Virus record (IMG/VR): IMGVR_UViG_3300021511_000003
Location: 159,016 to 223,015 of that record
Direction: 5' to 3' (one strand)
Length of the DNA stretch: 64,000 nucleotides
A program made the position numbers and the translations under genes. Positions 2,564 through 16,548 of the stretch are shown piece by piece. The notes under the pieces were generated by a model. It saw nothing but the letters and a program-made list of their open reading frames with translations, had not been told where the DNA came from and did not search any database. Positions within the stretch are counted from its first letter, which is position 1. Each line of letters opens with the position of its first letter.

Positions 2564-2640
2564 TGGGGTGACCAACGGGATTTGAACCCGTATAACAAGG
2601 GCCACAACCTTGCCTCTGAAACCATTCGAGTATAGCCACC
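2564..2640 (-). tRNA. tRNA-His(GUG), G-1 and CCA encoded
   Basis: Anticodon arm CAAGG-TTGTGGC-CCTTG; acceptor GTGGCTA/TGGTCAC, C73. Confidence 0.93.
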
Positions 2641-2644
2641 ATAA

Positions 2645-3046
2645 TTAGTTTAACTTATTTTCAAATGGAACAAACCAACTTTTCCATGATTTTTCTGTTA
2701 CAATTTCTTTTAATTTTGTTGTTGTTAAATTCATAGGAATGTCTTGTAATTTTTTATACGTCCCCAATTTTTTTGTGGCTTCTAAAATGGGAATGTTTTC
2801 ATTACATAACAAACACCTATATGTATCAGCGGTATTTATAATATTTTTAATTGAATTTGCAATATCTGGATATATGTATTCTAACATAGTTGCTCTAGTG
2901 AAAAGTTCTCCTGTTTGAACATGTATATTAATAAATTCTTTCATTAATAACCATATATTTTTATTTTCTCGTATTTTATATTCTTTTTTTATATATCTAT
3001 CATTAGTTTTGACAGATATATATTTTCTATTCTTTCTTTCCAACAT
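2645..3046 (-). CDS. hypothetical protein
   Basis: 133-aa ORF co-oriented with neighbours. Confidence 0.5.
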   Translation of the reverse strand: MLERKNRKYISVKTNDRYIKKEYKIRENKNIWLLMKEFINIHVQTGELFTRATMLEYIYPDIANSIKNIINTADTYRCLLCNENIPILEATKKLGTYKKLQDIPMNLTTTKLKEIVTEKSWKSWFVPFENKLN

Positions 3047-3299
3047 CTGTCACCTCAGTGTTTATTTTTCAATACATTGTAGGGCACATATATAACAGTA
3101 ATATTCTCGGTTCGGCATTTTGTAAGTACTTTCGTTAAAAATTGAAGGCTTTCCACCTTATCGCCAGGTTTGCTCATTGAGTAGTTAGCACTTTATTAAG
3201 ACGATTGGTCACGTCACCATTTCTGGCTTTGGTTGCCACTGGACTATTGCCAACGAAGATTGACCATATAGGGATATATCTTGAAGGCTCATTATTTTT

Positions 3300-3376
3300 T
3301 GGTGGAACTCCTCTGTATCGAACAGAGTTCTTTCGGGGATTCAACCGGACGATATGACCTCATTAGCTAGAATCGC
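3300..3376 (-). pseudogene. degenerate tRNA-like element (GAA/Phe-like anticodon)
   Basis: Perfect T arm CTCTG-TTCGATA-CAGAG and ACCA end, but mismatches in acceptor, D and anticodon stems; loop TTGAATC has a pyrimidine at 37. Confidence 0.5.
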
Positions 3377-3632
3377 CTCCTTTTCCACCTTCATGTAAAT
3401 TATAATAATTATTAGAAGATACACAGTTATATTTTTTATATAAAAAATCTCGAGTTTATTGAGTTCATCTTTACTTTTTGCTTTCTTGATAATTTTTATT
3501 TTAAACTTGGATTTCCATATTTTTTAATACAACACCACTACCAAGATTCAATGGTTTGAATTTTCCTTTGCTTTGCCCTATATATTTTTTACCATTGATA
3601 AGGTTTGTTGTCTCGTATATATAACCGTACAT
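3363..3632 (-). pseudogene. GIY-YIG (Seg-like) homing endonuclease remnant, frameshifted
   Basis: MYGYIYETTNLINGKKYIGQSKGKFKPLNLGSGVVLK then shifted frame KYG...DELNKLEIFYIKKYNC...YNLHEGGKGG. Confidence 0.75.
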
Positions 3633-3898
3633 TATTTCCCCTTAACATTAGCCCAAGCGGTTACTCCCATATACGCACCAATTATAGAGGTCATAGCAAA
3701 ATAAAACCATGTAATTGTTTCAGATAATATATTAAGTTTTTCATTTGAAATTGGAGCGAATAAAAGAATTAATGTAAACGTTAACATAGATAACAGTGCA
3801 ATCCAACCCATTTTTCTTCTACCTCTCCATTTATTCCGTTCTAATTCATATTCTTTTTCTTTTAAATCCAAATTATCTAAAGATATAGGGTCTACCAT
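3632..3898 (-). CDS. small two-TM membrane protein
   Basis: Two hydrophobic stretches (GWIALLSMLTFTLILLF; WFYFAMTSIIGAYMGV). Confidence 0.6.
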   Translation of the reverse strand: MVDPISLDNLDLKEKEYELERNKWRGRRKMGWIALLSMLTFTLILLFAPISNEKLNILSETITWFYFAMTSIIGAYMGVTAWANVKGK

Positions 3899-3923
3899 AG
3901 TATTACCTCTTATTATATTTAAC

Positions 3924-3998
3924 TGGAGCGGACAATGAGATTCGAACTCATAATCACCTGCTTGGCAAGCAGGTACTCTACCTTTGAGCTATGCCCGC
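3924..3998 (-). tRNA. tRNA-Gly(GCC)
   Basis: CCTGC-TTGCCAA-GCAGG; GCGGGCA acceptor, U73, CCA. Confidence 0.95.
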
Positions 3999-4230
3999 TG
4001 TGTTACTCATTGAAATTGTTAAATCATGATATTTTTGTGTTCTTACTTTTTTATGTTCAGCATTTATTGGATGAAGGGAACCAAACACATGACCGAAACC
4101 ATCCTGGTGTTGATGCATAATAATTTCAATCTTTTTCATTTTTGACTTTTTCATTTTTGACTTTTTCATTTTTATTCCTTTCTTGAATGTATAAAAACTT
4201 ATCTACTTTATCAAAATTATTTAAACCTTT

Positions 4231-4596
4231 TTAGATTCCATTTTTAATACAGTTTTTTATGTCACCAATTTTAAATACAAATGTGATCATTGATGGTCCA
4301 CGCCCAAAATCTATTTCAACCCCTCCTATATGCCCGCCAACAAAAGTCATTCCTTTATTTATTTTCATACTATCAAGCTGCTTTACCATGGCTGGTGGTA
4401 TTGGAGGACCAACTGTGATAGTAATATCTTCAGGAACTATAACTGGTTTGAAATGTCGTACTGGTATAAATTGCATTACTTTAGAATCTTTTTTTAAGAT
4501 ACAAGTTTGACCTTCTTCAAATGCATAAACAGAAGGTAATATACATATTGATATAATTAAAATTGATAATATTACTTTAACAATATTTTTTAACAT
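4231..4596 (-). CDS. hypothetical protein with signal peptide
   Basis: N-terminal hydrophobic leader ending VYA. Confidence 0.55.
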   Translation of the reverse strand: MLKNIVKVILSILIISICILPSVYAFEEGQTCILKKDSKVMQFIPVRHFKPVIVPEDITITVGPPIPPAMVKQLDSMKINKGMTFVGGHIGGVEIDFGRGPSMITFVFKIGDIKNCIKNGI

Positions 4597-4605
4597 AATT
4601 TAACC

Positions 4606-5100
4606 TCAATCCCACCAACTTTCTATATGTTTACTCATTAATTTAAATAAGTATTTAAGATCATTACGTTTTGAGTATTGTTCATGTTTATAAGATGCAT
4701 GAAAATCTTTTTTTTCCTGAATTTTGTCTTTTTCGGTTTTAACATTCGGACGAGTTAGGTGAAGCTGATGCAAGTCAGAATTATTTTTACACACTGTGTA
4801 TGACATTTTAAGTTCACCCCATTTTTTGTCTATATCTTTATATGCCATTATATGATATTCATCTTTGATTAATCGGTCCAGAAGATTAATACATACCTTT
4901 ATTTTATTAGCATCATGTTCTGCATTTAAACTTATTCCTTTATATCGAATAAATTGTTCAGTGAGATGAAGTTTGTGTCGAAGAATTATATAAATATAAT
5001 GATTGTCCCAATTTCTATCTTTCCATATAACAGGAAACCATTTTATTAAATTTTTAATACCATTTTTAAAATTGTATAATAATTCTTTAATTTTCTCCAA
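4606..5100 (-). CDS. hypothetical phage protein
   Basis: 164-aa ORF, WFPVIWKDRNWD...HIESWWD, RBS AAGGAG. Confidence 0.65.
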   Translation of the reverse strand: MEKIKELLYNFKNGIKNLIKWFPVIWKDRNWDNHYIYIILRHKLHLTEQFIRYKGISLNAEHDANKIKVCINLLDRLIKDEYHIMAYKDIDKKWGELKMSYTVCKNNSDLHQLHLTRPNVKTEKDKIQEKKDFHASYKHEQYSKRNDLKYLFKLMSKHIESWWD

Positions 5101-5122
5101 TTTATCTCCTTTTTAAGAGTTT

Positions 5123-5208
5123 TGGAGCGGGCGGCGGGATTCGAACCCGCGATGCATAAATGCGTCAACGTGGAAGGCTGATGGAGTACCGGACTCTCCA
5201 ACGCCCGC
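5123..5208 (-). tRNA. tRNA-Gly(UCC) with 14-nt variable arm
   Basis: TCAGC-CTTCCAC-GTTGA; variable region CGCATTTATGCATC; acceptor GCGGGCG/CGCCCGC, U73, CCA. Confidence 0.9.
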
Positions 5209-5313
5209 TATTTATTATTTGATAAATTATATAATTCTTCCATGATTTTTGGATTATCTATCTATATATTCTTCTGTTGCTTTTAACAGTTCCTTTCATT
5301 TGAAATTAAATGA

Positions 5314-5946
5314 CTAAGTTTTTGGAGTTAGATAAAAATATTTTCGTTCGTTATTATATTTACCCATGAAATATTGTCTTTCATATGTATAATATTTTTT
5401 TGTATGTTTTTTCATGTAATTAATTGTATTCATTGAATGAAAAGATATTATTAATATTGGACAATGTTTTGAAAAATCAAATGTACTGAGTATTTTATCT
5501 TCCCAATTCTCTACATCCATTTTTATTAAATCTGGAAGAGGTAGATTATTTTGTTTAATAAAGTCATAAAGAACAACTGTTTGTACTTCACTTTTATATA
5601 TCCTTGAACGATTATCTGTAGGATATTTTATTGAGTCATCATCCCTTCCTAATAAAAAGTTTTTGTCAAATGATGAACCCCCATCTTTTACAGGTACATT
5701 ATATAATGTTAATTTTTCATTTTTATTACTTACGCCAATATTGAAACTATTAATTTTATTTCCAAATTTACTGACTAATAAATTATATGGATTTGAAGCA
5801 GGATCAAATGCATATATATTGACATTGATTTTTATTAATTGATTGAATAAGTTAATTGTATCTCTATTTGGATATGCACCTAAATCATAATAATTTTTAT
5901 AATTATGAAGTTTACATAACTTAACTATCAACTCTTCTTTTGTCAT
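5314..5946 (-). CDS. FkbM-family SAM-dependent methyltransferase
   Basis: YDLGA (motif I), IYAFDP, PDLIKMDVE; ends in TAG. Confidence 0.7.
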   Translation of the reverse strand: MTKEELIVKLCKLHNYKNYYDLGAYPNRDTINLFNQLIKINVNIYAFDPASNPYNLLVSKFGNKINSFNIGVSNKNEKLTLYNVPVKDGGSSFDKNFLLGRDDDSIKYPTDNRSRIYKSEVQTVVLYDFIKQNNLPLPDLIKMDVENWEDKILSTFDFSKHCPILIISFHSMNTINYMKKHTKKYYTYERQYFMGKYNNERKYFYLTPKT

Positions 5947-6045
5947 ATTTTATATGTCCAGATTTTCAATGTTATTTTGTATAATGGTTCTCCATTAACT
6001 GAAATTGGGATTATTTCTGATATATTCAAATCCTTTATTTTAAAA

Positions 6046-6122
6046 TGGTAGCGACAACTGGAATTGAACCAGTGACCTATGCCTTATCAAGACATTGCTC
6101 TACCCGACTGAGCTATGCCGCT
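6046..6122 (-). tRNA. tRNA-Ile(GAU)
   Basis: ATGTC-TTGATAA-GGCAT; canonical cloverleaf, CCA. Confidence 0.95.
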
Positions 6123-6156
6123 ATTTAATATTTGTTCTAATTATTCTATAATAATG

Positions 6157-6236
6157 TGGCTGACGGGGTGGGAGTCGAACCCACATCTTCTTGGTTAACA
6201 GCCAAGCGCTTCACTGCCATTCTGAGCTACCCGTCA
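6157..6236 (-). tRNA. tRNA-Asn(GUU)
   Basis: CTTGG-CTGTTAA-CCAAG; U1-A72, G73, CCA. Confidence 0.93.
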
Positions 6237-6425
6237 AAAAACATTAATACCATTATCAATATGTTTTGCTTCAATGACCATTTTGATATAATCTTCTTCA
6301 GATTTGACTTTCCAATATTTTACAACATATGGAGAATTAAAATATTCAGGATCCGATTCGACTACAATAAAAGGCTTCCAAATTATTTGACCATTTGTAT
6401 GTAAATAATAATAACCTGGTTTCAT
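6234..6425 (-). CDS. small hypothetical protein (true start MKPGYYYLH)
   Basis: ORF-track upstream extension overlaps a tRNA; ATG at 6425 follows AAGGA. Confidence 0.55.
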   Translation of the reverse strand: MKPGYYYLHTNGQIIWKPFIVVESDPEYFNSPYVVKYWKVKSEEDYIKMVIEAKHIDNGINVF

Positions 6426-6443
6426 AAATATCCTTAAAAATTG

Positions 6444-6520
6444 TGGTAGTCCCGGGAGGACTTGAACCTCTCTTCTTACCGTTATAAGCGATGCGCTCTG
6501 ACCAGTTGAGCTACGGGACC
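6444..6520 (-). tRNA. tRNA-Ile(UAU)
   Basis: Loop CTTATAA, anticodon TAT; acceptor GGTCCCG/CGGGACT, A73, CCA. Confidence 0.88.
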
Positions 6521-6582
6521 ATATACATGATTTAATCATCTATATATATTAACTAATGATTTATATTAAATCATTTTTAAAT

Positions 6583-6658
6583 TGGTGGACCGGAAGGGAC
6601 TCGAACCCTCAACCTTTGCCTTGCAGGGGCATTGCTCACCCAATTGAGCTACCAGCCC
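6583..6658 (-). tRNA. tRNA-Ala(UGC), C33
   Basis: G3:U70 pair; loop CCTGCAA. Confidence 0.9.
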
Positions 6659-6666
6659 ATTATGAA

Positions 6667-6746
6667 TGGCGCCCATGACGGGAATTGAACCCGTAAATTA
6701 AGGTTGACAACCTTACGTAGTTCGCCTAACCTACTACCACATGGGC
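6667..6746 (-). tRNA. tRNA-Asp(GUC)
   Basis: TAAGG-TTGTCAA-CCTTA; GCCCATG/CATGGGC, G73, CCA. Confidence 0.93.
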
Positions 6747-7124
6747 ATTAAAATTTTATCTTTCTACTTTTGATCCAGCCTTTTGCTAACCATGATAAAA
6801 GGTCTATTGATAGAATAATTTTATTTTTTTCCTTTAAATAATATTTATATATCTAAAAAGTTTACATTAAAATGAAATATTTTTTTTCATTGAATAAATT
6901 TTTAATTACCTTCATTACAGGCATATTAATTTCCTCTGATTTCTTTTGTTTATAACATTCGACTATTAATCCTTGACTCAATGCAAATTTTTTTACCTCT
7001 TCAACAGTGAATATTTGCTCATAAGCAAAAATATCATTAATATCAAGTAATTTAAAAAAGTCAATATGATTTGTTAGAAATCTAAAATATCGTATTTTTT
7101 CATAATAAATCCTTTTTCAAAAAA

Positions 7125-7198
7125 TGGCAGGTCAGTGGGATTTGAATCCAACTTCTGGGTTTGGAGTCCAGTATTCTTACCGTTAGAACTACTGACCT
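7125..7198 (-). tRNA. tRNA-Trp(CCA), irregular T arm
   Basis: Loop CTCCAAA; AGGTCAG/CTGACCT, G73; T arm one nt short. Confidence 0.75.
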
Positions 7199-7210
7199 GT
7201 AAATATTTTT

Positions 7211-7289
7211 TGGTGACCCCGACGGGACTCGAACCCGTGTATTGAGGGTGAAGGCCTCATATCCTTATGCCTATTAGGACTACGGGGTC
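7211..7289 (-). tRNA. tRNA-Glu(UUC), C33
   Basis: TGAGG-CCTTCAC-CCTCA; GACCCCG/CGGGGTC, CCA. Confidence 0.9.
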
Positions 7290-7791
7290 ATTGTTTAACT
7301 TTTCTACACTTATCACATAATGTTGTAAGCCAACCATCACTATTTAATGTACCAGCTTTACCACATACTTCACATACATATTGAGACAATTCTTCAGCAT
7401 CATTAACAAAATCTTGAATTTTTTCCTCTGTAGATTTCCATATATATTTTCGTTTGAAATGTATGATACTATTATATTGTACACCTAATTTATGATTATA
7501 CATGAAGTTTCGAAATTTGTTTGCCAAAGAATCAATATAAGTTGGTTTATATTCAAGATGATAGTAAAAATTTAATACACCAAATTTTTCTTTGATTTGG
7601 TCAGCAATTATTTTTACTCCTGTTTTGTCAGATATAGTTTGAAGTTCTTGTAATAAATTTTCAAGAATAGCATACCAACCATCACCATGACTCATACCCC
7701 ATGCCATACAAGTATATCGCATATCACCACCATAGTCTTTGAGTATAACTGGGTATTTATTTTTTAGTTTCAATTCAAGTTCTACGTTCAT
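7288..7791 (-). CDS. hypothetical phage protein with C-terminal Cys pairs
   Basis: GDGWY...QIKEKFG...CEVCG...LCDKC. Confidence 0.65.
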   Translation of the reverse strand: MNVELELKLKNKYPVILKDYGGDMRYTCMAWGMSHGDGWYAILENLLQELQTISDKTGVKIIADQIKEKFGVLNFYYHLEYKPTYIDSLANKFRNFMYNHKLGVQYNSIIHFKRKYIWKSTEEKIQDFVNDAEELSQYVCEVCGKAGTLNSDGWLTTLCDKCRKVKQ

Positions 7792-8105
7792 GTGTATAAT
7801 TCCTTTATATCAAAATAAACTATTTTCGAAGGTCTTTTTTTAAAGACCACTGGACGAAGATCATCCGGATGCCATAAATAAGTTTTTATTATTGCAGCAC
7901 GGACATAATTTTCGGTTGTAATCTTGTCTATTTGATAAGGATGACCAGCCATTTTGCGCATAACAGAATTAACACCAAATAATTCTTTAGTAGTTTCTAT
8001 ATCCTCGTTTATAACAACTGTCATACCAACTTTCATTATATCTGGATGCATTTTTAAAATCCTTTTTATTGGTGGACCAGCTGGGAGTCGAACCCAGTTC
8101 CGCAA
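7788..8105 (-). CDS. hypothetical protein (true start probably downstream of tmRNA 3' end)
   Basis: ORF 5' part overlaps tmRNA end. Confidence 0.45.
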   Translation of the reverse strand: MRNWVRLPAGPPIKRILKMHPDIMKVGMTVVINEDIETTKELFGVNSVMRKMAGHPYQIDKITTENYVRAAIIKTYLWHPDDLRPVVFKKRPSKIVYFDIKELYT

Positions 8106-8455
8106 AAATTCAAATTAAGTATCTACACTCATAGTCAACTTTTAGATTTAGTTACCCCCACGTTCAAACACGGAGTTGACATAACAACGGAGCCAACGGT
8201 GTACATTTGCTGGTAAGTTTGAAAATAAGAATGCCAGTTTGCAGTACCATTGCCCATTCTTATTTCGATCTCTTTACGTCGATGCCCCATCCCAATTCAA
8301 GAGAATAATTGGGTGGAACAGATTAAGCAGCTTTTGCGAAATCGGTGTAATAATCGTCTGCAATTATTGTTAGTGATAATGTTTTTACGGAGTAACATAT
8401 CATTCTCCGGAGTGCAACTTTTTTTTCTTTTCCACGTCGAAACCTTTTCTGGCCC
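8070..8455 (-). ncRNA. ssrA: tmRNA, tag peptide (A)ADDYYTDFAKAA
   Basis: 5' GGGCCAGAAAAGGTTTCGAC; 3' T arm CTGGG-TTCGACT-CCCAG and CTGGTCC-ACCA with G3:U70; tag ORF at 8361-8323 after ATAATT. Confidence 0.93.
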
Positions 8456-8463
8456 ATATAAAT

Positions 8464-9021
8464 TTATAAGTTCAATAATATATTTTTAATAAAGTTTCCA
8501 TCAGATCCTTTAAATCGTTTCATGATTGGACCCATTGCTTGCATTTTATTCTTGAATCTACTCATATCAAGCCCTTTTATATATCTAATAATTTCTTCTT
8601 TATTTACTTGAGCAGGAAGATATTTTTTAGCGATTTTAATATTATGTGATATTAATTTATCGTCCAACTTTTGAATTTTATCTTTGACTATTTTTTTAAC
8701 TTCTGCTGGAGTCTTACCAGATACATCAGCTTCTTTTAAAAATTTTAGCTCATACAATCTTCTTTCTTTTTCTTGATTTATATATTTTTTCAATAACTTG
8801 ATGATATCATCATCGGTAATATCTTTTGATTTTTTTCCAGTTTCAGGGAACATACTTATAATTGCTCTTGAAACTGTTTTTTGTGCAATCATAATGTTAT
8901 ATGCTGTTTTAGTTTCTTTACTGTTAGCCAAAAATACAATAACTCCTTTCTTTCTATATTTTATTTCAATTTCCATTGCGTATTTCAGATCAGCTCTTAT
9001 TCTTTTTAATATTTTACTCAT
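8464..9021 (-). CDS. GatB/YqeY domain protein
   Basis: IRADLKYAM...DDDIIKLLKK...KKYLPAQVNKEEI...MGPIMK matches the YqeY pattern. Confidence 0.75.
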   Translation of the reverse strand: MSKILKRIRADLKYAMEIEIKYRKKGVIVFLANSKETKTAYNIMIAQKTVSRAIISMFPETGKKSKDITDDDIIKLLKKYINQEKERRLYELKFLKEADVSGKTPAEVKKIVKDKIQKLDDKLISHNIKIAKKYLPAQVNKEEIIRYIKGLDMSRFKNKMQAMGPIMKRFKGSDGNFIKNILLNL

Positions 9022-9046
9022 TATTTTATCCCATTTATTTTCTGTA

Positions 9047-9118
9047 TGGCCCAGGTGGGGATCGAACCCACGAATGAGGGTTTTAGAGACCCCTGCTCTA
9101 CCACTAAGCTACTGGGCC
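9047..9118 (-). tRNA. amber suppressor tRNA (anticodon CUA), CCA not encoded
   Basis: GGCCCAG/CTGGGCC acceptor, GCTT/GAGC D stem, GGGGT-CTCTAAA-ACCCT, GTGGG-TTCGATC-CCCAC, A73 then TAC. Confidence 0.9.
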
Positions 9119-9123
9119 TCTAA

Positions 9124-9447
9124 TTATAGTAGAAGACTCTTAAGATTATAACTATACATACAGTATGTATATACTAATATAACTAATGAAAAACATTTAA
9201 CTAAAAGAGTTGATTCCCTTTTAGTTAATTGTTTTTTTATTCCTTTGATTGTCAAATATAAAATTAATAATAGAAATGGTATTTTTGTTAATAACATTGT
9301 TGTTTGAATGCCAATAATTCCCATAAGGTAATTAATAATGGGGTTCATTTCTATAGCATCTTTGTCTAAAATAATTATAGTTGATATATAATCAAAAATA
9401 TTTATGAGCCAGATAAATACACAACTGATAATTAAAAATTTATTCAT
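9124..9447 (-). CDS. membrane protein (DUF5658-like)
   Basis: NIFDYISTIII...IEMNPII...TKIP; three hydrophobic helices. Confidence 0.6.
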   Translation of the reverse strand: MNKFLIISCVFIWLINIFDYISTIIILDKDAIEMNPIINYLMGIIGIQTTMLLTKIPFLLLILYLTIKGIKKQLTKRESTLLVKCFSLVILVYTYCMYSYNLKSLLL

Positions 9448-9734
9448 AATAAATTTAACCTTTCTGTAAACTTGCTATTCATATCAGTTGCTATTGCAGT
9501 TGTTTCATTATTCATATCTGGTTCTTTGAACTCAGTGTATGGAATTCCTTCTCTTTTAAATTTTATTTTTAAACTCTCTAACTGGTTCAAACCCTTAACA
9601 CCCAAGTATATTAAGGTACCATTGTTCCAGCGAGAGAGAGGGCTGTGAAGCATATAGTCAGCAACCGCATGACCTGCTTGCACAGCCCTTTGAGATATTG
9701 AAATATCTTTACGCACAATTACGTAGAGCTTCAT
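9444..9734 (-). CDS. peptidyl-tRNA hydrolase 2 (PTH2)-like protein
   Basis: True start MKLYVIVRKDISISQRAVQAGHAV...FKEPDMNNETTAIA. Confidence 0.75.
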   Translation of the reverse strand: MKLYVIVRKDISISQRAVQAGHAVADYMLHSPLSRWNNGTLIYLGVKGLNQLESLKIKFKREGIPYTEFKEPDMNNETTAIATDMNSKFTERLNLL

Positions 9735-10002
9735 CAATCTTACCTTCCCATGATAACATGTAATTTTCAATGACATGTTTACTTGGCTTGTCATTACATG
9801 AAATTTCAATCATATTATATGGAGTTCGATTAAATAATTGACAATAAGCTATATGTTTATGTCTATAGGTCCAACGATTTTCATCCAACCCATGAACAAA
9901 ACCAAAAACTTTATCTTTTCTTGTCTTTTTCTGCTCTTTGATCTTTTGTGCTAAAGATTTTTGCTCTTCTTTTATCTTATTTTTTAATTCCTTGAATGTC
10001 AT
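9709..10002 (-). CDS. hypothetical protein overlapping the PTH2-like gene
   Basis: MTFKELKNKIK...YRHKHIAYCQL; SD AAGGAG inside a hairpin. Confidence 0.7.
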   Translation of the reverse strand: MTFKELKNKIKEEQKSLAQKIKEQKKTRKDKVFGFVHGLDENRWTYRHKHIAYCQLFNRTPYNMIEISCNDKPSKHVIENYMLSWEGKIDEALRNCA

Positions 10003-10008
10003 GGTAAT

Positions 10009-10072
10009 CTCCTTTTTATTTCAGTTTAATTAATACAAAATACAATGTTTTACATTATAACTGAAATAGGAG
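10009..10072 (-). promoter_or_regulatory. SD-sequestering hairpin upstream of the 97-aa/PTH2 operon
   Basis: Transcript CTCCT-ATTTCAGTT ... AACTGAAAT-AAAA-AGGAG, 7 nt before ATG. Confidence 0.7.
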
Positions 10073-10109
10073 GTCCACGACATATCTATGGAAATTGTGA
10101 CTGTGCTAA

Positions 10110-10250
10110 CTAGTCATCAGTCCACTCAAAGTGGCATTCTGACTCGCAACACTTATTTGCACCGTGAGATTTATTAATCTCTTCGGCGTCTTTGGCTTCA
10201 TCTATTCGATGATCGCCAGAAATACCTTTATCCTCTGATTTTCTTTCCAT
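10110..10250 (-). CDS. 46-aa leader ORF ending in TAG
   Basis: Not in ORF track. AAGGAG RBS; MERKSEDKGISGDHRIDEAKDAEEINKSHGANKCCESECHFEWTDD*. Confidence 0.6.
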   Translation of the reverse strand: MERKSEDKGISGDHRIDEAKDAEEINKSHGANKCCESECHFEWTDD

Positions 10251-10346
10251 TATATTTTACTCCTTTGTTAACGTAATACTTCAACATTTATATTATGTTC
10301 TGATAAATGTTGTATAATAGTTTGAGAAATTGATATGGAGTGAAAA

Positions 10347-10433
10347 TGGTGGGGGGTGGAGGAGTTGAACCACTTGCCACCGCCTAACATATTTTGGCAA
10401 CGATTTTACAGACCGCAGTTAGGAACACCCCCC
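10347..10433 (-). tRNA. tRNA-Tyr(GUA)-like RNA lacking a D arm, with a 26-nt variable region
   Basis: GGGGGGT/ACCCCCC-ACCA; GCGGT-CTGTAAA-ATCGT; only GTTCCTAACT between acceptor and anticodon stems. Confidence 0.7.
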
Positions 10434-10642
10434 ATTATTTTAAGTCTTTACGTTTCCTCTCGATTACATATTCAATAACTTCTCCAAACTTATCAAATTC
10501 GATACATTTGAATTTTGTTCTTATATAAAAATAAAATAACCCAAATCTTTTTTTAACTCTATATTTACCCTTACCGTAATTAATTATACGATAAGTTCTA
10601 TTTGTATTTTTAACATGTGCTTTCCCATGATTTTATTCCTCC

Positions 10643-10891
10643 TTAACCTAGTTTTCTTCTAAAATCTTTATGATATATATAGTTACATCCCATACGAATG
10701 CACCATTTTGTAGCTTGATTATTAAGATATAAAAGACCACAATATTGACAATATAACCATGGGGTATTCTTTAATTTAATCGGTTTATGCCGTTCATATG
10801 AATAAGTAAGAGAGGTGTCTTTAATATTGTCTACTGTAATCCACATTCCTTTTTTAGACATATTATGCCTTTCAAAAATGATAATGTACAA
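10643..10891 (-). CDS. small Zn-finger-like hypothetical protein
   Basis: WLYCQYCGLLYLNN...CIRMGC. Confidence 0.55.
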   Translation of the reverse strand: MYIIIFERHNMSKKGMWITVDNIKDTSLTYSYERHKPIKLKNTPWLYCQYCGLLYLNNQATKWCIRMGCNYIYHKDFRRKLG

Positions 10892-10956
10892 GTGCTGAGC
10901 TTAATCTCAGTTTCGTTACCATCAGGAGTTACCCATCACATGGCACTTGTACGTAT

Positions 10957-11034
10957 TGGTAGACGTGGTAGGACTCGAACCTACATATACCATCTTGTAA
11001 GAATGGCGGCTAACCAATTCGCCTTCACACGTCC
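10957..11034 (-). tRNA. tRNA-Val(UAC)
   Basis: CCATT-CTTACAA-GATGG; CCA. Confidence 0.92.
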
Positions 11035-11361
11035 TTATAATTCATCTGTTAAAATTACAAAAGTTATAGAGCCACCTAAAAAAATTGTTACACCTTGTAA
11101 CCATCCAACTGATATAAGAAATATACAAAATAAAGCTAATTCCTGCCAAAATCCAAATGGGTCGATCATTAATCTTACTAATAAATATAACCATAAAGGA
11201 ATTAAAGCAATGATCCAGATGATTGTAATTATAACAAATTTTGCGATAATATTTAAATTTATAATTTTTTTTAATTTCTCTTTAATTGAATCATTTATTG
11301 TCAATATTGTTTTATTTTTTTTTATATTCATTATCTTTCCCTTTGGTTTCATTATTACCAA
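11035..11361 (-). CDS. membrane protein
   Basis: Two long hydrophobic segments. Confidence 0.55.
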   Translation of the reverse strand: MVIMKPKGKIMNIKKNKTILTINDSIKEKLKKIINLNIIAKFVIITIIWIIALIPLWLYLLVRLMIDPFGFWQELALFCIFLISVGWLQGVTIFLGGSITFVILTDEL

Positions 11362-12257
11362 AAACTTTTGTATAATTATCTCGATAGTTTTTATTTGTTG
11401 CCTTATGGGAAGAGTTCATCATGTTTTTACTCATATTAATCCTTTATATATCCATATTCTAAATCTTTTGGTGGTTCTTCTCCAAGACTAATCTTTAATT
11501 TTTCAAGGGCGATTTTAGCTTCTTCGGGCATTTGAAATCCACCAATTTTTGATCCTTGTCCTTCTGCGTGCCATCTCGGATCATTTTCTGAATATAACCA
11601 CCAACTTCCTGTTGTACTTTTGCTATAGAAGCCCATGAATCATCTCCTTCCATTGGTAACCATTGATAATCGTCTTTTTGTAAAGTCATTCCACTCCAAT
11701 ATGAATAAAGTTTTGCATCAATAATGGGTTTGATGTAATTGAATAACTTGCTAGGTATTCCTTCATCTTTTGATACACTGGTAAATCCAGTACAACCTGA
11801 TTCCTTCTTAAATTTACAACGAAAAAGTTTAGTTGTTGGAAGACTATGAGTGGTGTCAACATCATCAACGTAAAGCATCCCACTACATACTTTTAAAAAA
11901 GGACTAATATGGTCGAATTTAAATGTAATTCTAATCATACTATATAATTCTTTTTTTTATGTATTAACTATTTATTTTTCTTTTTCTTTTGTTCTTTCCA
12001 TTCTTGTTTGGAACAAAATTTATACCCGTCAGAATCAACTAAATTATGTGCTAGATCATTATTTACACGACGAATCTTTCCATTTTTTTTAATACACTTC
12101 ATCAAGATTTCCTTTTTTTAGAATTTTATTTACGATTATTTTTAATTCAGGTCTTTTATTTTTGATTTAATTTAAGTAATTATCAGATTTTTCTTTAAGA
12201 AGAAATTCTATTCTTCTTTCTTGTGCTTTAGAACTAAACATAATAACCTTTTTTATA

Positions 12258-12345
12258 TGGCGGAGGGAGTAGGATTCGAACCCACGGAGCTTTGACACCC
12301 AACGATTTTCAAGACCGCCGCCTTAAACCACTCAGCCATCCCTCC
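12258..12345 (-). tRNA. tRNA-Ser(UGA)
   Basis: Loop CTTGAAA, class II variable arm, G73, CCA. Confidence 0.95.
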
Positions 12346-12355
12346 ATAATTATTA

Positions 12356-12658
12356 TTATCCTATACCAAAACAACACACATTATTAAATCGTGATGGTTT
12401 CTCAATGAGTAAATCATACAATTCAGTTTGTGGATTCCATTTATACCATTTCTCCATTCTTGGGAAAAAATATATTCCAGGTTTAACTTCCTCAATTACA
12501 CAGTATGAATAATAACCCTCTTCAGATATATCTAAACTGTTATTTATTACTTCATCTTCTGCAATTTTGAGATTGAAAAAGAATCCAACACATCTAGAAA
12601 ATTTATGTGGTATGCGTGGAATAGTTGTTATAGTATAAATAACTTCATTTTTCAACAT
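12356..12658 (-). CDS. hypothetical phage protein
   Basis: 100-aa ORF, RCVGFF...YCVIEE...WYKW. Confidence 0.6.
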   Translation of the reverse strand: MLKNEVIYTITTIPRIPHKFSRCVGFFFNLKIAEDEVINNSLDISEEGYYSYCVIEEVKPGIYFFPRMEKWYKWNPQTELYDLLIEKPSRFNNVCCFGIG

Positions 12659-12677
12659 ACAGTACTCCTTTTAAAAA

Positions 12678-12763
12678 TGGCGGTGAGGACAGGAGTTGAA
12701 CCTGCATGACTGTTACATCGACTGATTAGCAATCAGCTGCTTTACCATTCAGCACACCTCACC
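12678..12763 (-). tRNA. tRNA-Ser(GCU)
   Basis: CTGA-TTGCTAA-TCAG, class II arm, G73, CCA. Confidence 0.95.
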
Positions 12764-13109
12764 GTTTGTTTTTAATATATTCTTTTCCTTCTATGAGAGC
12801 TTCTATAAAACCATCAATGTTACTTTCTTTTTGTAAAATGAAAGTTTCTTCAAGTTCAACATAACCTGTGAATAACATTATAAATGAGCATTTTATTCGT
12901 TTCCACATACCTTGAAGCCAATTAAGTTCACCCCAATGAGAAGCCCATGCAATTGTTTTATGAAAGTTTAAGAAAATTATTCCTGGAATTTCTTTATCAA
13001 TTTCAAACTCAATAACAACATCATGCTCATTGGAACCACAATCACATTCGACACGATAATATATAGAATCCTCAAAACTATGTGTTTTCATTACATTTTT
13101 ACTAATCAT
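12759..13109 (-). CDS. hypothetical protein
   Basis: 116-aa ORF. Confidence 0.55.
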   Translation of the reverse strand: MISKNVMKTHSFEDSIYYRVECDCGSNEHDVVIEFEIDKEIPGIIFLNFHKTIAWASHWGELNWLQGMWKRIKCSFIMLFTGYVELEETFILQKESNIDGFIEALIEGKEYIKNKR

Positions 13110-13247
13110 TATTTTTCCTTTTAAAGTATGCCCAACCTACCCTAATTGTATCAGTGGATATTCTTATAGAAAATTTTCCACTAAAACCAACTCCCAAGGA
13201 TTTCAATATCGGAAGTCTTTCATTACTCAACGATAGTAAAATATTAT

Positions 13248-13335
13248 TGGTAGCGGAGAGGGGATTCGAACCCCTGTTCTTATTACAAGATCTGGCTTAT
13301 GAGACCAGTGAGCTAGACCACTACTCGACTCCGCA
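13248..13335 (-). tRNA. initiator-like tRNA-Met(CAU) with 16-nt variable arm
   Basis: Unpaired 1:72 (U:U), A11:U24, loop CTCATAA; variable region ATCTTGTAATAAGAAC. Confidence 0.85.
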
Positions 13336-13342
13336 TTAAGTT

Positions 13343-13948
13343 TTATTCTATATTTATAACGACAGCACGTCTGTTTGTTTCCAATGTACTACCAAATATA
13401 TCAGTTTCACCGAATGCTCGGTAGGTGATACGTTTCATATCAATACCTTTGTCAACCAATTCTTTTCTAACTGATTCAGAACGTTTATATGCAAGACCCA
13501 TATTATATTTTTCAGATCCTTCTATGCTGGCATATGCCATAACCATTACTAAGGTATCTGGATACTCCTTCAACATATCAACGATTTTATTAACCTTTAC
13601 CATTTCAACATTGGTGATGATGGAACTATCATATGGAAAAAGGATTACTTCCTCTAATTCTGTAACCGTAATTGGTGCCGGTTTTAATTTCTTTAATGTC
13701 TCTACTTTCTTCAACCACTTGGAATCGGTAATCTCTTCAACTACTTCAGGAACTTCAACTTCTTTTGGACCATGATATAAAACATTATTGTTGGTTTTCG
13801 CTATAATAACATTTCCTTCATCAGTAACAGTTGCTTGATCTGAAAGAGGTGCAGAAAGATCTGTATGTGAAAGAACACTTACACTACTACAACCCATAAA
13901 CATAAATGCTAAAGCAATTGTCAATGTGATATTAATAATACTTTTCAC
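13343..13948 (-). CDS. OmpA C-terminal-like (peptidoglycan-binding) lipoprotein
   Basis: Lipobox FMGC; ILFPYDSS, ASIEGSEKYNMGLAYKRSESV, NRRAV. Confidence 0.85.
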   Translation of the reverse strand: MKSIINITLTIALAFMFMGCSSVSVLSHTDLSAPLSDQATVTDEGNVIIAKTNNNVLYHGPKEVEVPEVVEEITDSKWLKKVETLKKLKPAPITVTELEEVILFPYDSSIITNVEMVKVNKIVDMLKEYPDTLVMVMAYASIEGSEKYNMGLAYKRSESVRKELVDKGIDMKRITYRAFGETDIFGSTLETNRRAVVINIE

Positions 13949-13979
13949 GTTATTTCTCCTTTTTAATTATTCGTTTGTT

Positions 13980-14067
13980 TGGTGGCCCAGGTGGGACTCG
14001 AACCCACACGGGAATATTTCCCACAAGATTTTAAGTCTTGAGCGTCTACCAGTTCCGCCACTGAGCC
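13980..14067 (-). tRNA. tRNA-Leu(UAA)
   Basis: CAAGA-CTTAAAA-TCTTG, class II arm, A73, CCA. Confidence 0.95.
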
Positions 14068-14071
14068 AAAA

Positions 14072-14296
14072 TTAGTTACTAAGTTTATTTTTTACGGTTT
14101 CATCAGTAATTGGAAATCTTCCTTGTATTCTACCACAATCAAGGCAGATTTCAAAGTTAACATAATCACCCTCTCCTATATTTAGATCGGTTGGTACATG
14201 ACCATCTCTTCCCATTTCATTATACATTACACAACACATATCATTACATTTTGCATCGACTTCCATTAAACGGGTACTACCACATTTACATGACAT
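14072..14296 (-). CDS. small Cys-rich protein (true start MSCKCG)
   Basis: CKCGS...AKCNDMC...CLDCG; RBS GAAAGGA. Confidence 0.6.
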   Translation of the reverse strand: MSCKCGSTRLMEVDAKCNDMCCVMYNEMGRDGHVPTDLNIGEGDYVNFEICLDCGRIQGRFPITDETVKNKLSN

Positions 14297-14323
14297 TAAT
14301 ATATTCCTTTCAAAAATATGAAA

Positions 14324-14623
14324 TTGGATCCAAAAAGCAGCCAGAAGTGAATTGATGCTGATAAGAAGCTTCACTTAACCTGGATTTATATTGGTGTTAT
14401 TTTTAACACTCCCAAAACTTAATTCTTTATAACTTTAATCTTGACTGGCGCAATATTTATTCTCGTTGCGGTACGAGTTAAACTTAAGGCTTAATTCTTG
14501 AAACTTGATAATAAGTACCAATTTACATAGTAATATAGCTTTGTAGGCTATTATCAGTAAGATTCATATTTAACCCGATATGAGAGGGCTTATCTATTTC
14601 ATTGTTTACACTAGTGAATCCAA
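14324..14623 (-). ncRNA. candidate structured intergenic RNA
   Basis: 8-bp closing helix TTGGATTC/GGATCCAA spanning the spacer plus several internal hairpins. Confidence 0.45.
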
Positions 14624-14627
14624 AGTT

Positions 14628-15173
14628 TTAAGTTAATGACCGCGTTTTAGGTATGTCTTGAAGGTAGGTTGTTGCATTAATAACTTCAAGGCGTCCCTCA
14701 ATAGTCTTTCCTGATGTTAAATCTTCCCATTTTCTTTGTCCTGACCGTTTAACATTTTCATTATATAATCTTATGATCGTTGGTGCTGCCGAATCTTTCT
14801 CTCTATAACGAACTTGATTTCGATTTGCTTCATTTGTTGATAAAGACCTGAAAGTCTGAATTAATCGCTGACCTGTCTTTCTCAAAACAGTTAACCAATT
14901 ATGAATACTTCTTGTTTCATCATCAATTGTAACCATAGTAATTAGATTGGTGTAGTCGATCATTGCTTTGATATGACAATACTCTTTTTCTAAATCATTA
15001 TTGGATTGAATCAGTTTTACAACCTCTTCACTTTGTGCCTGTTCAGTACCAAAAATTGGTTTTTCATTTGAAAGAAGTGAAGAATATTTTTCAATTTCAT
15101 CACAGTTCTTTGCCATTCGTTTGTCAATGAGTTTTAATTTCTTAAGTCCTTCAATAATTGTCATATTATTCAT
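14628..15173 (-). CDS. coiled-coil hypothetical protein (DIP1984-like N-terminus)
   Basis: MTIIEGLKKLKLIDKRMAKN...; family resemblance recalled, not searched. Confidence 0.55.
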   Translation of the reverse strand: MNNMTIIEGLKKLKLIDKRMAKNCDEIEKYSSLLSNEKPIFGTEQAQSEEVVKLIQSNNDLEKEYCHIKAMIDYTNLITMVTIDDETRSIHNWLTVLRKTGQRLIQTFRSLSTNEANRNQVRYREKDSAAPTIIRLYNENVKRSGQRKWEDLTSGKTIEGRLEVINATTYLQDIPKTRSLT

Positions 15174-15679
15174 TTTTACAATTTCCTTTTGAATAAAAGT
15201 TTAGTTTTAGATGTTATCAATAATAACAAATTTGATAACTGCTACTATAATATTAATTATTGACATTATTATACATAATGAATTAAATTTCATAAAATTA
15301 ATATTACCATCTATATCACAATAACTCAAATAGTTTATTTTATTTTCACATAATACAGAACAACATGGTGAGACCAAACATTTTTTACATGGATCTTTAA
15401 CAAAGAAAATATAAAAAATCCTATGACGAAAACTTTTTGGTTTATTAATGTTTATGCTGTTGTATATCATTGAGTAATAGATTCCCCAAATTCAAATTTA
15501 GCAAAATCAACAAAATCTCTACATCGACATAATAAAGTTACTATATCAGATACGTTTATATTTTCTGCAATTATCGAATCCGGTGATACACATTCTAATT
15601 TATCAGACATGTTTATTATTGATGATTCGAGTTCTTCTATTTTTTTTTCTTTCATAAACATTCCTTTCAGAATCTAAAT

Positions 15680-15758
15680 TGGAAGCCCCTCCAGGATTCG
15701 AACCTGGGAAAATGACGGGTCCAAGGCCCGCCGTGTTAGGCCGCTTCACCAAGGGGCT
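15680..15758 (-). tRNA. tRNA-Gln(UUG), C33
   Basis: GCGGG-CCTTGGA-CCCGT; AGCCCCT/AGGGGCT, CCA. Confidence 0.88.
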
Positions 15759-15829
15759 ATAATATTACCTTTGTCTTTAGAATATTTAAATACAGAATTA
15801 TGTTCTAATTCACCTATATGGATTAAAGA

Positions 15830-16540: not shown

Positions 16541-16548
16541 TTATATTT

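What the first reader, a model, noticed from the sequence alone, without database searches (positions are those of the whole stretch)
9047..9118. Amber-suppressor tRNA in a phage that is not TAG-recoded, and the only tRNA needing CCA addition
Seen: a canonical 72-nt cloverleaf with loop CTCTAAA (CUA). Long genes (1074-aa polymerase, portal, MCP) are intact in code 11, and TAG ends several genes (5314, 29629, 33793, 53462). Every other tRNA here encodes CCA; this one ends A73-TAC. The body (G1-C72, A73) is not Gln-like (U1-A72, G73) and not Pyl-like. Known: Sup-CUA tRNAs usually accompany TAG->Gln recoding in large phages. Inference: conditional readthrough rather than recoding, possibly gated by the phage CCA enzyme; the inserted amino acid is unclear.
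Basis: partly seen in the sequence, partly recalled or inferred. Interest (0 to 1): 0.75.

Follow-up and report, generated by a model that had tools for sequence, protein, structure and literature searches.

The report
Amber-suppressor tRNA in non-recoded jumbo phage
A large phage from deep-sea sediments carries a well-formed tRNA that should read the stop codon UAG, although the phage uses UAG only as a stop; this tRNA is kept across a whole group of related phages, a puzzle already reported for other giant phages and still unexplained.

Summary
The tRNA is real. It is a canonical 72-nt class-I cloverleaf with anticodon CUA, on the minus strand at 9047-9118 (Rfam 69.5 bits), followed by TAC instead of CCA.

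The 223-kb contig holding the window and a 248-kb relative with the orthologous tRNA both use the standard code:
- Code 15 adds at most 0.6% coding density.
- No orthologue alignment spans an in-frame TAG.
- TAG ends 9-13% of ORFs.
- No release-factor, GluRS/GlnRS or TrpRS/TyrRS domain was found in this contig.

The tRNA sits at a fixed position (DUF5658-Sup-YqeY/tmRNA) in the tRNA island of at least 10 metagenomic jumbo-phage lineages. CUA is invariant and the stems show compensatory changes, so selection maintains it.

The missing CCA is not a family trait:
- 9 of 11 intact orthologues encode N73-CCA.
- The window's end fits a 3-nt deletion.
- tRNA-Lys, just outside the window, also lacks CCA.
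- The relative without a CCA-adding enzyme encodes CCA on all 30 tRNAs.

"CCA gating" is therefore unsupported. Relaxed selection under a phage CCA enzyme fits better.

The same puzzle was published for cultured phage XacN1 in 2018, and Borges et al. place suppressor acquisition before recoding. The inserted amino acid and the benefit remain unresolved. This is a new member of a known kind.

The parts
9047..9118 (-). tRNA with anticodon CUA (amber suppressor): 72 nt, class I, G1-C72, A73
   Evidence: ARAGORN; Rfam RF00005 69.5 bits; sequence read; orthologues with covariation in alignment A1
9044..9046 (-). 3' trailer TAC where the other tRNAs have CCA. Best read as the result of deleting U73-C74-C75 from an ancestral ...CTGGGCC-TCCA
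   Evidence: L045 has CTGGGCC-T-CCA-tat, the window has CTGGGCC-A-TAC. Identical in contigs of other samples
9022..9043 (-). AT-rich stretch making up most of the 25-nt spacer (9022-9046) before the next ORF; no ribozyme or terminator detected
   Evidence: Rfam E-value scan of 8850-9250 finds only the tRNA; terminator scan
8464..9021 (-). 185-aa YqeY/GatB-tail-like ORF directly downstream of the tRNA
   Evidence: Pfam YqeY 26.1 bits, just under the 27-bit cut-off; PHROG 1460 'tRNA amidotransferase'. 177 metagenomic homologues, most carrying PF09424. Syntenic in relatives
8070..8455 (-). phage tmRNA, tag ADDYYTDFAKAA
   Evidence: ARAGORN; Rfam RF00023 137.8 bits; conserved next to Sup in the clade
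9124..9447 (-). DUF5658 ORF directly upstream of the tRNA; this position is conserved in relatives
   Evidence: Pfam PF18902 33.3 bits. The same domain lies directly upstream of Sup in L006 and L007
9444..9809 (-). PTH2-like peptidyl-tRNA hydrolase ORF
   Evidence: Pfam PF01981 26.6 bits, cut-off 23; orthologue in G001 at 65.5% identity
1199..2545 (-). CCA-adding tRNA nucleotidyltransferase with HD domain
   Evidence: Pfam PolyA_pol, PolyA_pol_RNAbd, tRNA_NucTran2_2 and HD; PHROG 2244; NCBIfam best hits are CCA tRNA nucleotidyltransferases; absent from relative G001
263..1174 (-). RlaP-family nucleotidyltransferase next to the CCA enzyme
   Evidence: Pfam PF10127 76.7 bits; no homologue in G001
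2564..17013 (-). tRNA island: 22 tRNAs plus the tmRNA in the window, continuing 2.3 kb beyond the window start with Arg, Cys and Lys. It covers 19 amino acids; Tyr is missing

Best explanation
This is a genuine, selectively maintained amber-suppressor tRNA gene. It has orthologues across a clade of standard-code jumbo phages from marine sediment and hydrothermal-vent communities. It occupies a fixed place in their tRNA/tmRNA island (PTH2 - DUF5658 - Sup(CUA) - YqeY-like - tmRNA).

Shown: it is not needed to read any phage gene, because TAG occurs only as a terminator in this contig and in the 248-kb relative.

Inferred mechanism:
- The transcript is cut by RNase P and its 3' trailer is removed.
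- CCA is added by the host or the phage CCA-adding enzyme.
- A host aminoacyl-tRNA synthetase that tolerates or favours C34-U35 charges it. Gln is most likely by precedent and Lys is next; the sequence does not decide.
- In the infected cell it competes with RF1 at UAG, giving partial readthrough.
- The phage tolerates this because TAG is its rarest stop (27 of 292 ORFs) and its core genes end in TAA.

The benefit is not visible in the sequence. It is most likely directed at host or competitor translation, or it buffers amber mutations in an AT-rich 220-kb-plus genome.

The missing CCA is a secondary, lineage-specific 3-nt deletion, permitted by the phage's own CCA-adding enzyme. It is not a conserved regulatory gate.
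For: Real tRNA:
-.

Orthologues:
- They lie at the same position in the order Ser-Ser-Val-(Tyr)-Sup-tmRNA-Glu-(Trp)-Asp-Ala-Ile-Asn-Ile-Gly in the window, L004/L057, L006 (=G001), L027, L045/L071, L076/L087, L065, L089, L086 and L030.
- In alignment A1 of 12 sequences, 97.6% of cells are paired, 10 of 21 pairs show compensatory changes, none of 500 shuffles reaches this, and CUA is invariant.

Standard code:
- G000 coding density is 0.907 (code 11) versus 0.913 (code 15).
- G001 is 0.926 under both codes.
- MCP is 88% identical between the two with no stops.
- 172 reciprocal-best orthologues were found. The 13 TAG stops not conserved as TAG (of 15) are replaced at the same protein end, 12 by TAA and 1 by TGA.
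- No alignment spans an in-frame TAG in either direction.
- Long continuations after TAG are separate genes.
- No RF domain, GluRS/GlnRS or Trp/TyrRS in G000.

CCA:
- 9 of 11 intact orthologues encode CCA.
- G000 tRNA-Lys also lacks it.
- G001 has no CCA enzyme and encodes CCA on 30 of 30 tRNAs.
- About 24% of 84 unique metagenomic Sup(CUA) tRNAs of this body type lack CCA.
- CBB's CUA tRNA also lacks CCA, and CBB has a CCA enzyme.

Stability:
- The allele is identical in contigs from other samples.

Precedent:
- XacN1.
- The Borges model.
Against: - Charging and suppression are not shown.
- The discriminator is U73 in 7 lineages and A73 in 4, so no single E. coli-type identity rule fits. The body does not match GlnRS rules at 1-72, 3-70 and 73.
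- One relative (L007/L008) carries a copy with a 3-nt duplication at the T-stem/acceptor junction that scores only 34 bits. The gene can therefore decay.
- TAG-ended genes show no excess of nearby back-up stops. One might expect such an excess if suppression were strong.
- The contigs are rated 71% and 79% complete, so an unseen recoded segment cannot be excluded.
Confidence: 0.6

Rival explanations
1. Neutral passenger or pre-recoding intermediate. The suppressor was acquired by a low-GC, TAG-poor standard-code lineage, as in the Borges pathway. It currently does little and is simply tolerated.
For: - Borges et al. propose the order low GC, then TAG/TGA depletion, then suppressor acquisition, then recoding, and they saw a standard-code relative with a suppressor.
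- TAG is the rarest stop: 27 versus 58 TGA in G000 and 48 versus 81 in G001.
- One lineage has a damaged copy.
- Two lineages lost the encoded CCA. By a rough count, Sup lost CCA more often than other tRNAs (2 of 11 versus about 3 of 150, p about 0.04).
Against: - The gene keeps its position, an invariant CUA and compensatory stem changes across lineages whose proteins are only about 50% identical. That is hard to reconcile with neutrality.
- No clade member examined shows recoding.
Confidence: 0.2
2. Hidden recoding. TAG-containing genes, for example a lysis cassette, lie in the part of the genome missing from the contig, and the tRNA serves them.
For: - CheckV-type completeness is 71% for G000 and 79% for G001, and both are linear.
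- In recoded phages the recoding can be limited to late and lysis genes.
- A 2.9-kb contig with a similar tRNA (L032) has an in-frame TAG in the PTH2-like gene next to it.
Against: - 223 kb plus 248 kb were examined without one in-frame TAG in a conserved gene.
- G001 extends about 29 kb beyond both ends of G000, and the bins holding those ends (1-20 kb and 240-248 kb) gain nothing under code 15 (0.92 vs 0.93; 0.95 vs 0.91).
- Structural genes (MCP, portal) are standard-code.
- No RF2 gene.
Confidence: 0.07
3. Readthrough is conditional and switched on by the phage CCA-adding enzyme, because this tRNA alone must receive CCA.
For: - The tRNA lacks CCA, and the phage encodes a CCA-adding enzyme 6.5 kb away in the same island.
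- CCA-less phage tRNAs and phage CCA enzymes co-occur elsewhere (Kienbeck et al.; CBB).
Against: - The state is not conserved: 9 of 11 intact orthologues encode CCA.
- tRNA-Lys in the same genome also lacks CCA.
- G001 keeps the suppressor with CCA and has no CCA enzyme.
- Most bacteria carry their own CCA-adding enzyme (control genomes), so the phage enzyme need not be limiting.
Confidence: 0.06
4. Programmed readthrough of particular phage genes. The tRNA extends or fuses specific TAG-terminated proteins.
For: 6 of 21 TAG-ended ORFs of at least 80 aa in G000 continue in frame for 50 codons or more, against 24 of 228 for other stops (p = 0.027).
Against: - Each continuation has its own SD and ATG within 1-7 codons.
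- The five with an orthologue in G001 end there at the same residue, four in TAA and one in TGA.
- There is no such enrichment in G001: 9 of 40 versus 55 of 260.
- TAG identity is conserved in only 2 of 15 orthologue pairs, which is about chance.
- The XacN1 authors made the same search and found nothing.
Confidence: 0.04

Closest known systems
Tandem tRNA-Sup(CUA) genes of Xanthomonas jumbo phage XacN1 (Yoshikawa et al. 2018, PMC5852040)
   Same: - A cultured, standard-code jumbo phage with a large tRNA set, a CCA-type nucleotidyltransferase and CUA-anticodon class-I tRNAs.
- The first copy has a very similar body: GGCCCGT..., identical T stem GTGGG/CCCAC, and loop CTCTAAA.
- The authors read through all 18 amber stops in silico and found no target.
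   Different: - XacN1 has two copies, with A73 and G73, both with encoded CCA, inside 66-kb terminal repeats.
- There is no adjacent tmRNA, YqeY or DUF5658.
- The polymerase is only about 26% identical.
tRNA 'Pyl' (anticodon CTA) of Pectobacterium jumbo phage CBB (KU574722)
   Same: - A CUA tRNA in a cultured phage annotated in the standard code.
- It lacks an encoded CCA (ends A73-Caa).
- The phage has a CCA-type enzyme and a PTH2 gene in the tRNA region.
   Different: The acceptor stem and the neighbouring genes differ, and no tmRNA lies beside it.
Suppressor tRNAs of TAG-to-Gln recoded phages (Lak, crAss-like and others; Borges et al., Peters et al.)
   Same: - Phage-encoded CUA tRNA, low-GC genome and TAG as the rarest stop.
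- The expected mode of action is competition with RF1 and charging by a host enzyme.
   Different: - Here there is no in-frame TAG, no coding-density gain and no RF2 gene.
- The phage comes from marine sediment and vent samples rather than the gut.
Theta-ribozyme-associated phage tRNAs (Kienbeck et al. 2024, PMC10879173)
   Same: A CCA-less phage tRNA, often a suppressor, in genomes enriched for a CCA-adding enzyme.
   Different: No HDV-like element follows this tRNA. Only 25 AT-rich bases separate it from the next ORF.
CCA-less tRNAs of phage T4 and the T4 psu1+ serine amber suppressor (from my own knowledge, not checked here)
   Same: A phage tRNA without encoded CCA that depends on host 3' trimming (RNase BN/Z) and CCA addition before it can suppress amber codons.
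   Different: psu1+ is a laboratory mutant of a sense tRNA. The tRNA here is a natural, conserved suppressor.

Membership tests
Canonical elongator tRNA (Rfam RF00005) | Cloverleaf with 7-bp acceptor stem, D arm with G18G19, 5-bp anticodon stem, 7-nt loop with U33, and a T-loop TTCGA | tested here: met
   69.5 bits over the full model; sequence read; covariation in 12 orthologues
Amber suppressor tRNA | Anticodon CUA at positions 34-36 of a standard 7-nt loop | tested here: met
   Loop C32 U33 C34 U35 A36 A37 A38; CUA invariant in 12 orthologues
Amber suppressor tRNA | Is aminoacylated and inserts an amino acid at UAG in vivo | not testable with these tools
   No RNA or proteome data are available; only DNA runs hold the sequence
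tRNA-Pyl | 6-bp anticodon stem, 3-nt variable loop, small D loop without G18G19, one base between the acceptor and D stems | tested here: not met
   5-bp anticodon stem, 5-nt variable loop, D loop AGTGGTA with GG, U8 A9, and a canonical T loop. The ARAGORN label 'Pyl' follows from the anticodon only
tRNA-Pyl | Accompanying pylS and pylBCD genes | not tested
   No search for PylRS was run
TAG-recoded (code 15) phage | Coding density at least 5% higher under code 15 for genomes over 100 kb (criterion quoted) | tested here: not met
   +0.6% in G000 and 0.0% in G001, by my own ORF-cover method rather than Prodigal
TAG-recoded (code 15) phage | In-frame TAG inside conserved genes | tested here: not met
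   No orthologue alignment spans a TAG in either direction; MCP, portal and polymerase are intact
TAG-recoded (code 15) phage | Phage RF2 or a matching aaRS (an accessory feature, present in some) | tested here: not met
   PF00472, PF00749 and PF00579 are absent from G000, with positive controls
Theta-ribozyme-associated tRNA | HDV-like self-cleaving ribozyme starting directly after the tRNA 3' end | tested here: not met
   Permissive Rfam scan of 8850-9250 finds no ribozyme, and a 25-nt AT-rich spacer leads to the next ORF. Rfam may lack a dedicated theta model
tRNA-Gln by E. coli GlnRS rules (from my own knowledge) | U1-A72, G73, G2-C71, G3-C70, G10, U35 | tested here: inconclusive
   Met: U35, G10, G2-C71. 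Not met: G1-C72, C3-G70, A73 (U73 in most orthologues). The host is unknown, and the phage's own tRNA-Gln has A1-U72 with U73, A73 or G73 depending on lineage, so E. coli rules may not apply
tRNA-Tyr turned suppressor (supF type) | Bacterial class-II body with a long variable arm | tested here: not met
   5-nt variable loop. Relative L004 has both a class-II Tyr(GTA) tRNA and the Sup tRNA side by side

The most novel reading that the evidence does not exclude
The conserved block PTH2 - DUF5658 - Sup(CUA) - YqeY-like - tmRNA is a dedicated termination-interference module.
- The suppressor drives ribosomes through host UAG stops.
- The phage tmRNA, with its own tag ADDYY..., and the peptidyl-tRNA hydrolase then handle the resulting stalled or run-on complexes.
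- The outcome would be shut-down or recycling of host translation while the TAA-terminated phage genes are spared.
- The YqeY/GatB-tail protein would act as a trans-acting tRNA-binding helper for charging the suppressor.
Probability: 0.1. Interest if true: 0.7.

Novelty: new member of a known kind. Interest (0 to 1): 0.3.

Why it matters
Suppressor tRNAs are usually discussed as the tool of stop-codon-recoded phages. Here a whole clade of standard-code jumbo phages keeps one under selection, which adds weight to the older single-genome observation in XacN1. It suggests that amber suppression has a use of its own during infection, or that it is a stable stage on the way to recoding.

The clade gives a comparative set for testing what such tRNAs do: 11 intact orthologues, one damaged copy, and variants with and without CCA and with U73 or A73.

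For annotation, it shows that a CUA tRNA is not enough to call a phage recoded. It also shows that a missing CCA on one tRNA need not be regulatory.

Tried and rejected
- **Derived from the missing tRNA-Tyr:** rejected. The body is class I, and L004 has both Tyr(GTA) and Sup.
- **Derived from phage tRNA-Leu(UAA):** the window's Leu shares the acceptor and T arm. G001 and L086 show no such likeness, so this is a lineage-specific coincidence.
- **Nearest isoacceptor by pairwise identity among clade tRNAs:** no clear winner.
- **Inferring the amino acid from in-frame TAGs aligned to G000/G001 proteins:** only the unrelated recoded contig L075 (about 32% identity, uninformative) and one site in L032 turned up.
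- **Back-up stops after TAG:** no difference from other stops.
- **Faster turnover of TAG than TGA stops:** nominal p = 0.009, but 19 of 30 TGA stops sit in ATGA overlaps. Without them p = 0.09.
- **Ribozyme or terminator after the tRNA:** none.
- **Host inference from the NAPRTase gene:** scattered MAG hits, uninformative.
- **DNA similarity to cultured phages:** none by megablast. The YqeY-like protein has no tblastn hit in cultured phages. The exact anticodon-arm pattern is absent from IMG/VR.
- **Shared gene context with the XacN1 and CBB suppressors:** none.
- **First script for calling CCA ends:** it was out of register and its output was discarded. The simpler rule is lenient, so its counts are approximate.

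Full report
**Observation**

ARAGORN finds 20 tRNAs and one tmRNA in the window, all on the minus strand between 2.5 and 17 kb. One has anticodon cta, at 9047-9118. Rfam's tRNA model scores it at 69.5 bits over the full model, the second-best tRNA in the window. Rfam also finds two tRNAs that ARAGORN missed, Trp(CCA) at 7128-7198 and Glu(TTC) at 7214-7289.

Read from the minus strand, the gene is a textbook class-I cloverleaf:
- GGCCCAG-TA-GCTT-AGTGGTA-GAGC-A-GGGGT-CTCTAAA-ACCCT-CATTC-GTGGG-TTCGATC-CCCAC-CTGGGCC-A, followed by TAC.
- 25 AT-rich bases then lead to the next ORF.

Every other tRNA in the window has CCA after its discriminator. Contigs from three other sequencing runs reproduce the tRNA and its 3' flank without a difference, so the CCA-less end is not an assembly error.

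**Is the phage recoded?**

The window is the last 64 kb of a single 223,015-bp contig with 30% GC. A greedy cover with ORFs of at least 60 aa gives a coding density of 0.907 under code 11, 0.913 with TAG as sense and 0.903 with TGA as sense. No 10-kb bin stands out apart from the tRNA island and the contig end, where any removed stop helps equally. Stops of 292 chosen ORFs are TAA 207, TGA 58 and TAG 27.

Six TAG-ended ORFs continue in frame for 50 codons or more.
- Each continuation has its own ATG within 1-7 codons.
- Several also show a Shine-Dalgarno-like motif overlapping the stop, as in TAGGAG.
- One pair is a tandem duplicate of a P-loop gene.

A relative, G001 (248,136 bp, 35% GC), has an MCP 88% identical with no internal stops. 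It was fetched whole.
- Its density is 0.926 under both codes, and TAG ends 48 of 356 ORFs.
- Among 172 reciprocal-best orthologues (mean identity 53%), alignments run to both C-termini.
- Of the 15 TAG stops in G000, 12 face TAA, 1 TGA and 2 TAG in G001.
- Translating both genomes with TAG as X and aligning against the other genome's proteins gives no credible alignment across an X.
- G000 has no release-factor domain, no GluRS/GlnRS and no Trp/TyrRS catalytic domain, with positive controls in reference genomes.

So TAG is a terminator here and nothing in about 470 kb of clade sequence needs the tRNA. The caveat is that both records are linear and rated 71% and 79% complete. G001 extends about 29 kb past both ends of G000. 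The bins holding those ends gain nothing under code 15 (0.92 vs 0.93 and 0.95 vs 0.91).

**The tRNA is a conserved family member**

The ORF directly downstream is YqeY-like and has 177 metagenomic homologues. Their contigs, together with a metagenome scan for the anticodon-arm pattern, show a clade of large phage contigs with the same gene order: Ser-Ser-Val-(Tyr)-Sup(CUA)-tmRNA-Glu-(Trp)-Asp-Ala-Ile-Asn-Ile-Gly....

Twelve orthologous Sup sequences align with 83% mean column identity and an invariant CTCTA in the anticodon loop. On the cloverleaf, 97.6% of cells pair and 10 of 21 pairs show changes on both sides. Examples are GGTCCAG/CTGGACC, AGCCCAG/CTGGGCT, GGGCCAG/CTGGCCC and TCCCCAG/CTGGGGA. 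None of 500 shuffles and no slid register comes close. That is the signature of a tRNA kept functional over a divergence at which proteins are about half identical.

One lineage (L007/L008, from the same sample as the window) has a copy with a CAC duplication between the T stem and the acceptor strand, and G37. It scores only 34 bits, so the gene can be lost.

Loci carrying tRNAs of this body type mostly show no TAG-specific gain in coding density. Only the unrelated L075 looks truly recoded.

**The missing CCA**

Of the 11 intact orthologues:
- 7 end U73-CCA and 2 end A73-CCA.
- Only the window (A-TAC) and L004/L057 (A-TCA) lack CCA.

The nearest relative, L045, reads CTGGGCC-TCCA-TAT and the window reads CTGGGCC-ATAC. 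Deleting TCC turns one into the other, so the window's 'A73' is probably the former A76. L004 differs by two substitutions, so that loss is independent.

In the full contig, tRNA-Lys(UUU), 2.3 kb before the window, also lacks CCA (A-CTA). Its G001 orthologue has A-CCA.

G001 encodes CCA on all 30 tRNAs and has no homologue of the CCA-adding enzyme or of the adjacent RlaP gene. G000, XacN1 and CBB each have a CCA-type nucleotidyltransferase, and CBB's CUA tRNA also lacks CCA. About a quarter of 84 unique metagenomic Sup(CUA) tRNAs of this type lack CCA.

The simplest reading is relaxed selection on encoded CCA where the phage brings its own CCA-adding and repair enzyme. A switch specific to the suppressor is not needed to explain the data. 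No HDV-like or theta ribozyme follows the tRNA (compare Kienbeck et al.).

**Which amino acid?**

This is not resolved.
- The tRNA is not Pyl-like.
- It is not a converted Tyr tRNA, because L004 has both.
- It is not a converted Leu tRNA, because the likeness to Leu(UAA) is confined to this genome.
- Pairwise identity to the clade's own tRNAs names no parent.
- The discriminator varies between U and A, and the phages' own tRNA-Gln has U73, A73 or G73. Rules learned in E. coli therefore cannot be transferred to an unknown host.
- By precedent (TAG to Gln in all recoded phages infecting standard-code hosts; host GlnRS recognises C34-U35) Gln is my first guess. Lys is second. I hold both weakly.

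**What is it for?**

Tests for a phage-internal target were negative:
- No conserved readthrough extensions.
- No conservation of TAG as such (2 of 15, about chance).
- No excess of nearby back-up stops.
- The nominal enrichment of long in-frame continuations after TAG in G000 (p = 0.027) is absent in G001.

The apparent faster turnover of TAG than of TGA stops disappears when ATGA start-stop overlaps are set aside.

What remains is a conserved suppressor embedded between a PTH2-like hydrolase, a DUF5658 protein, a YqeY/GatB-tail-like protein and a phage tmRNA. The same island holds a CCA enzyme and RlaP, and an RtcB gene lies about 35 kb away in the window. Together these look like a translation-maintenance or take-over toolkit.

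I therefore favour an active suppressor whose effect falls mainly on host or competitor messages, or which buffers amber mutations. The rival is a tolerated passenger on the Borges path to recoding.

**Comparison with what is known**

The same situation was described for the cultured Xanthomonas phage XacN1. It has two CUA tRNAs and 18 amber stops, and in-silico readthrough found no targets (PMC5852040). Its first copy resembles this tRNA closely.

Pectobacterium phage CBB carries a CCA-less CUA tRNA annotated 'Pyl'.

Borges et al. propose suppressor acquisition by low-GC, TAG-poor standard-code phages as the step before recoding.

The finding is therefore a new member of a known and still unexplained kind. 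What is new here is the evidence for long-term conservation in a clade from marine sediment and hydrothermal-vent metagenomes, and the fixed association with the tmRNA block.

**Verdict**

- Observation: confirmed, with two corrections. The gene is on the minus strand, and a second CCA-less tRNA lies just outside the window.
- Interpretation: partly supported. 'Not recoded' holds. 'CCA-gated readthrough' does not.
- Interest: 0.3.

Noticed in passing
G000:C1:156688-156761 (2.3 kb before window position 1): tRNA-Lys(UUU) of the same contig ends A73-CTA rather than A73-CCA. The G001 orthologue has CCA. This is a second CCA-less tRNA in the genome.
   Followed up: yes
window 8070-8455 (-): Phage-encoded one-piece tmRNA with tag ADDYYTDFAKAA. 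It is conserved next to the suppressor across the clade, with tags ADDYYTEYAQAA, ADDYYTEVALAA and ADDYYEDLALAA.
   Followed up: partly
window 8464-9021 (-): YqeY/GatB-tail-like 185-aa protein 25 nt downstream of the suppressor tRNA. It has 177 metagenomic homologues at 50-70% identity, none in cultured phages. It always lies near the tmRNA, including in L007 where the Sup copy is damaged.
   Followed up: partly
window 263-2545 (-): The CCA-adding enzyme (with HD domain) and the RlaP nucleotidyltransferase form a block that the otherwise collinear relative G001 lacks entirely.
   Followed up: yes
whole contig G000, and G001: The phage tRNA set covers 19 amino acids, and Tyr is the only one missing in both G000 and G001. 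Relative L004 has a class-II Tyr(GTA) between Val and Sup.
   Followed up: partly
L007:9051-9129 (and L008): The Sup(CUA) orthologue carries a 3-nt CAC duplication at the T-stem/acceptor junction and G37, and scores 34 bits in Rfam. It is a probable decaying copy, in a 128-kb relative from the same metagenome as the window.
   Followed up: partly
alignment A1, columns 30 and 42 (tRNA positions 29 and 41): Five orthologues (L087, L089, L065, L086, L030) keep a U-U mismatch in the middle of the anticodon stem.
   Followed up: no
L032:1614-1979: A 2.9-kb contig has an in-frame TAG inside the PTH2-like gene that lies directly upstream of its own Sup(CUA) tRNA. This could be a recoded relative or a self-regulating arrangement.
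   Followed up: no
G000:C1:8826-9794, 89823-91817, 145204-146859 (outside the window): Several TAG stops form part of the next gene's ribosome-binding site (TAGGAG...), and the next gene starts in the same frame a few codons later. One case is a tandem pair of P-loop paralogues.
   Followed up: yes
window 5123-5208, 13248-13335, 6157-6236 (-): Some tRNAs are unusually long for their type: Gly(TCC) 86 nt, Met(CAT) 88 nt, Asn(GTT) 80 nt. Ile(TAT) reaches 97 nt in relatives. This suggests long variable regions or insertions.
   Followed up: no
window 43675-44832 (-) and 17028-18293 (-): An RtcB RNA ligase (PHROG 1075, E 1e-105) and a nicotinate phosphoribosyltransferase lie in the window. Together with PTH2 and the CCA enzyme they point to a broad RNA-repair and translation-maintenance repertoire.
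   Followed up: no
L075:242-2539: An unrelated 24%-GC contig with a similar Sup(CUA) tRNA is clearly TAG-recoded. Coding density rises from 0.57 to 0.82, and at least 9 in-frame TAGs aligned to G000/G001 homologues lie in an RNA-polymerase-like gene homologous to G000 genes at contig 71818-74838 and 35637-38348.
   Followed up: partly
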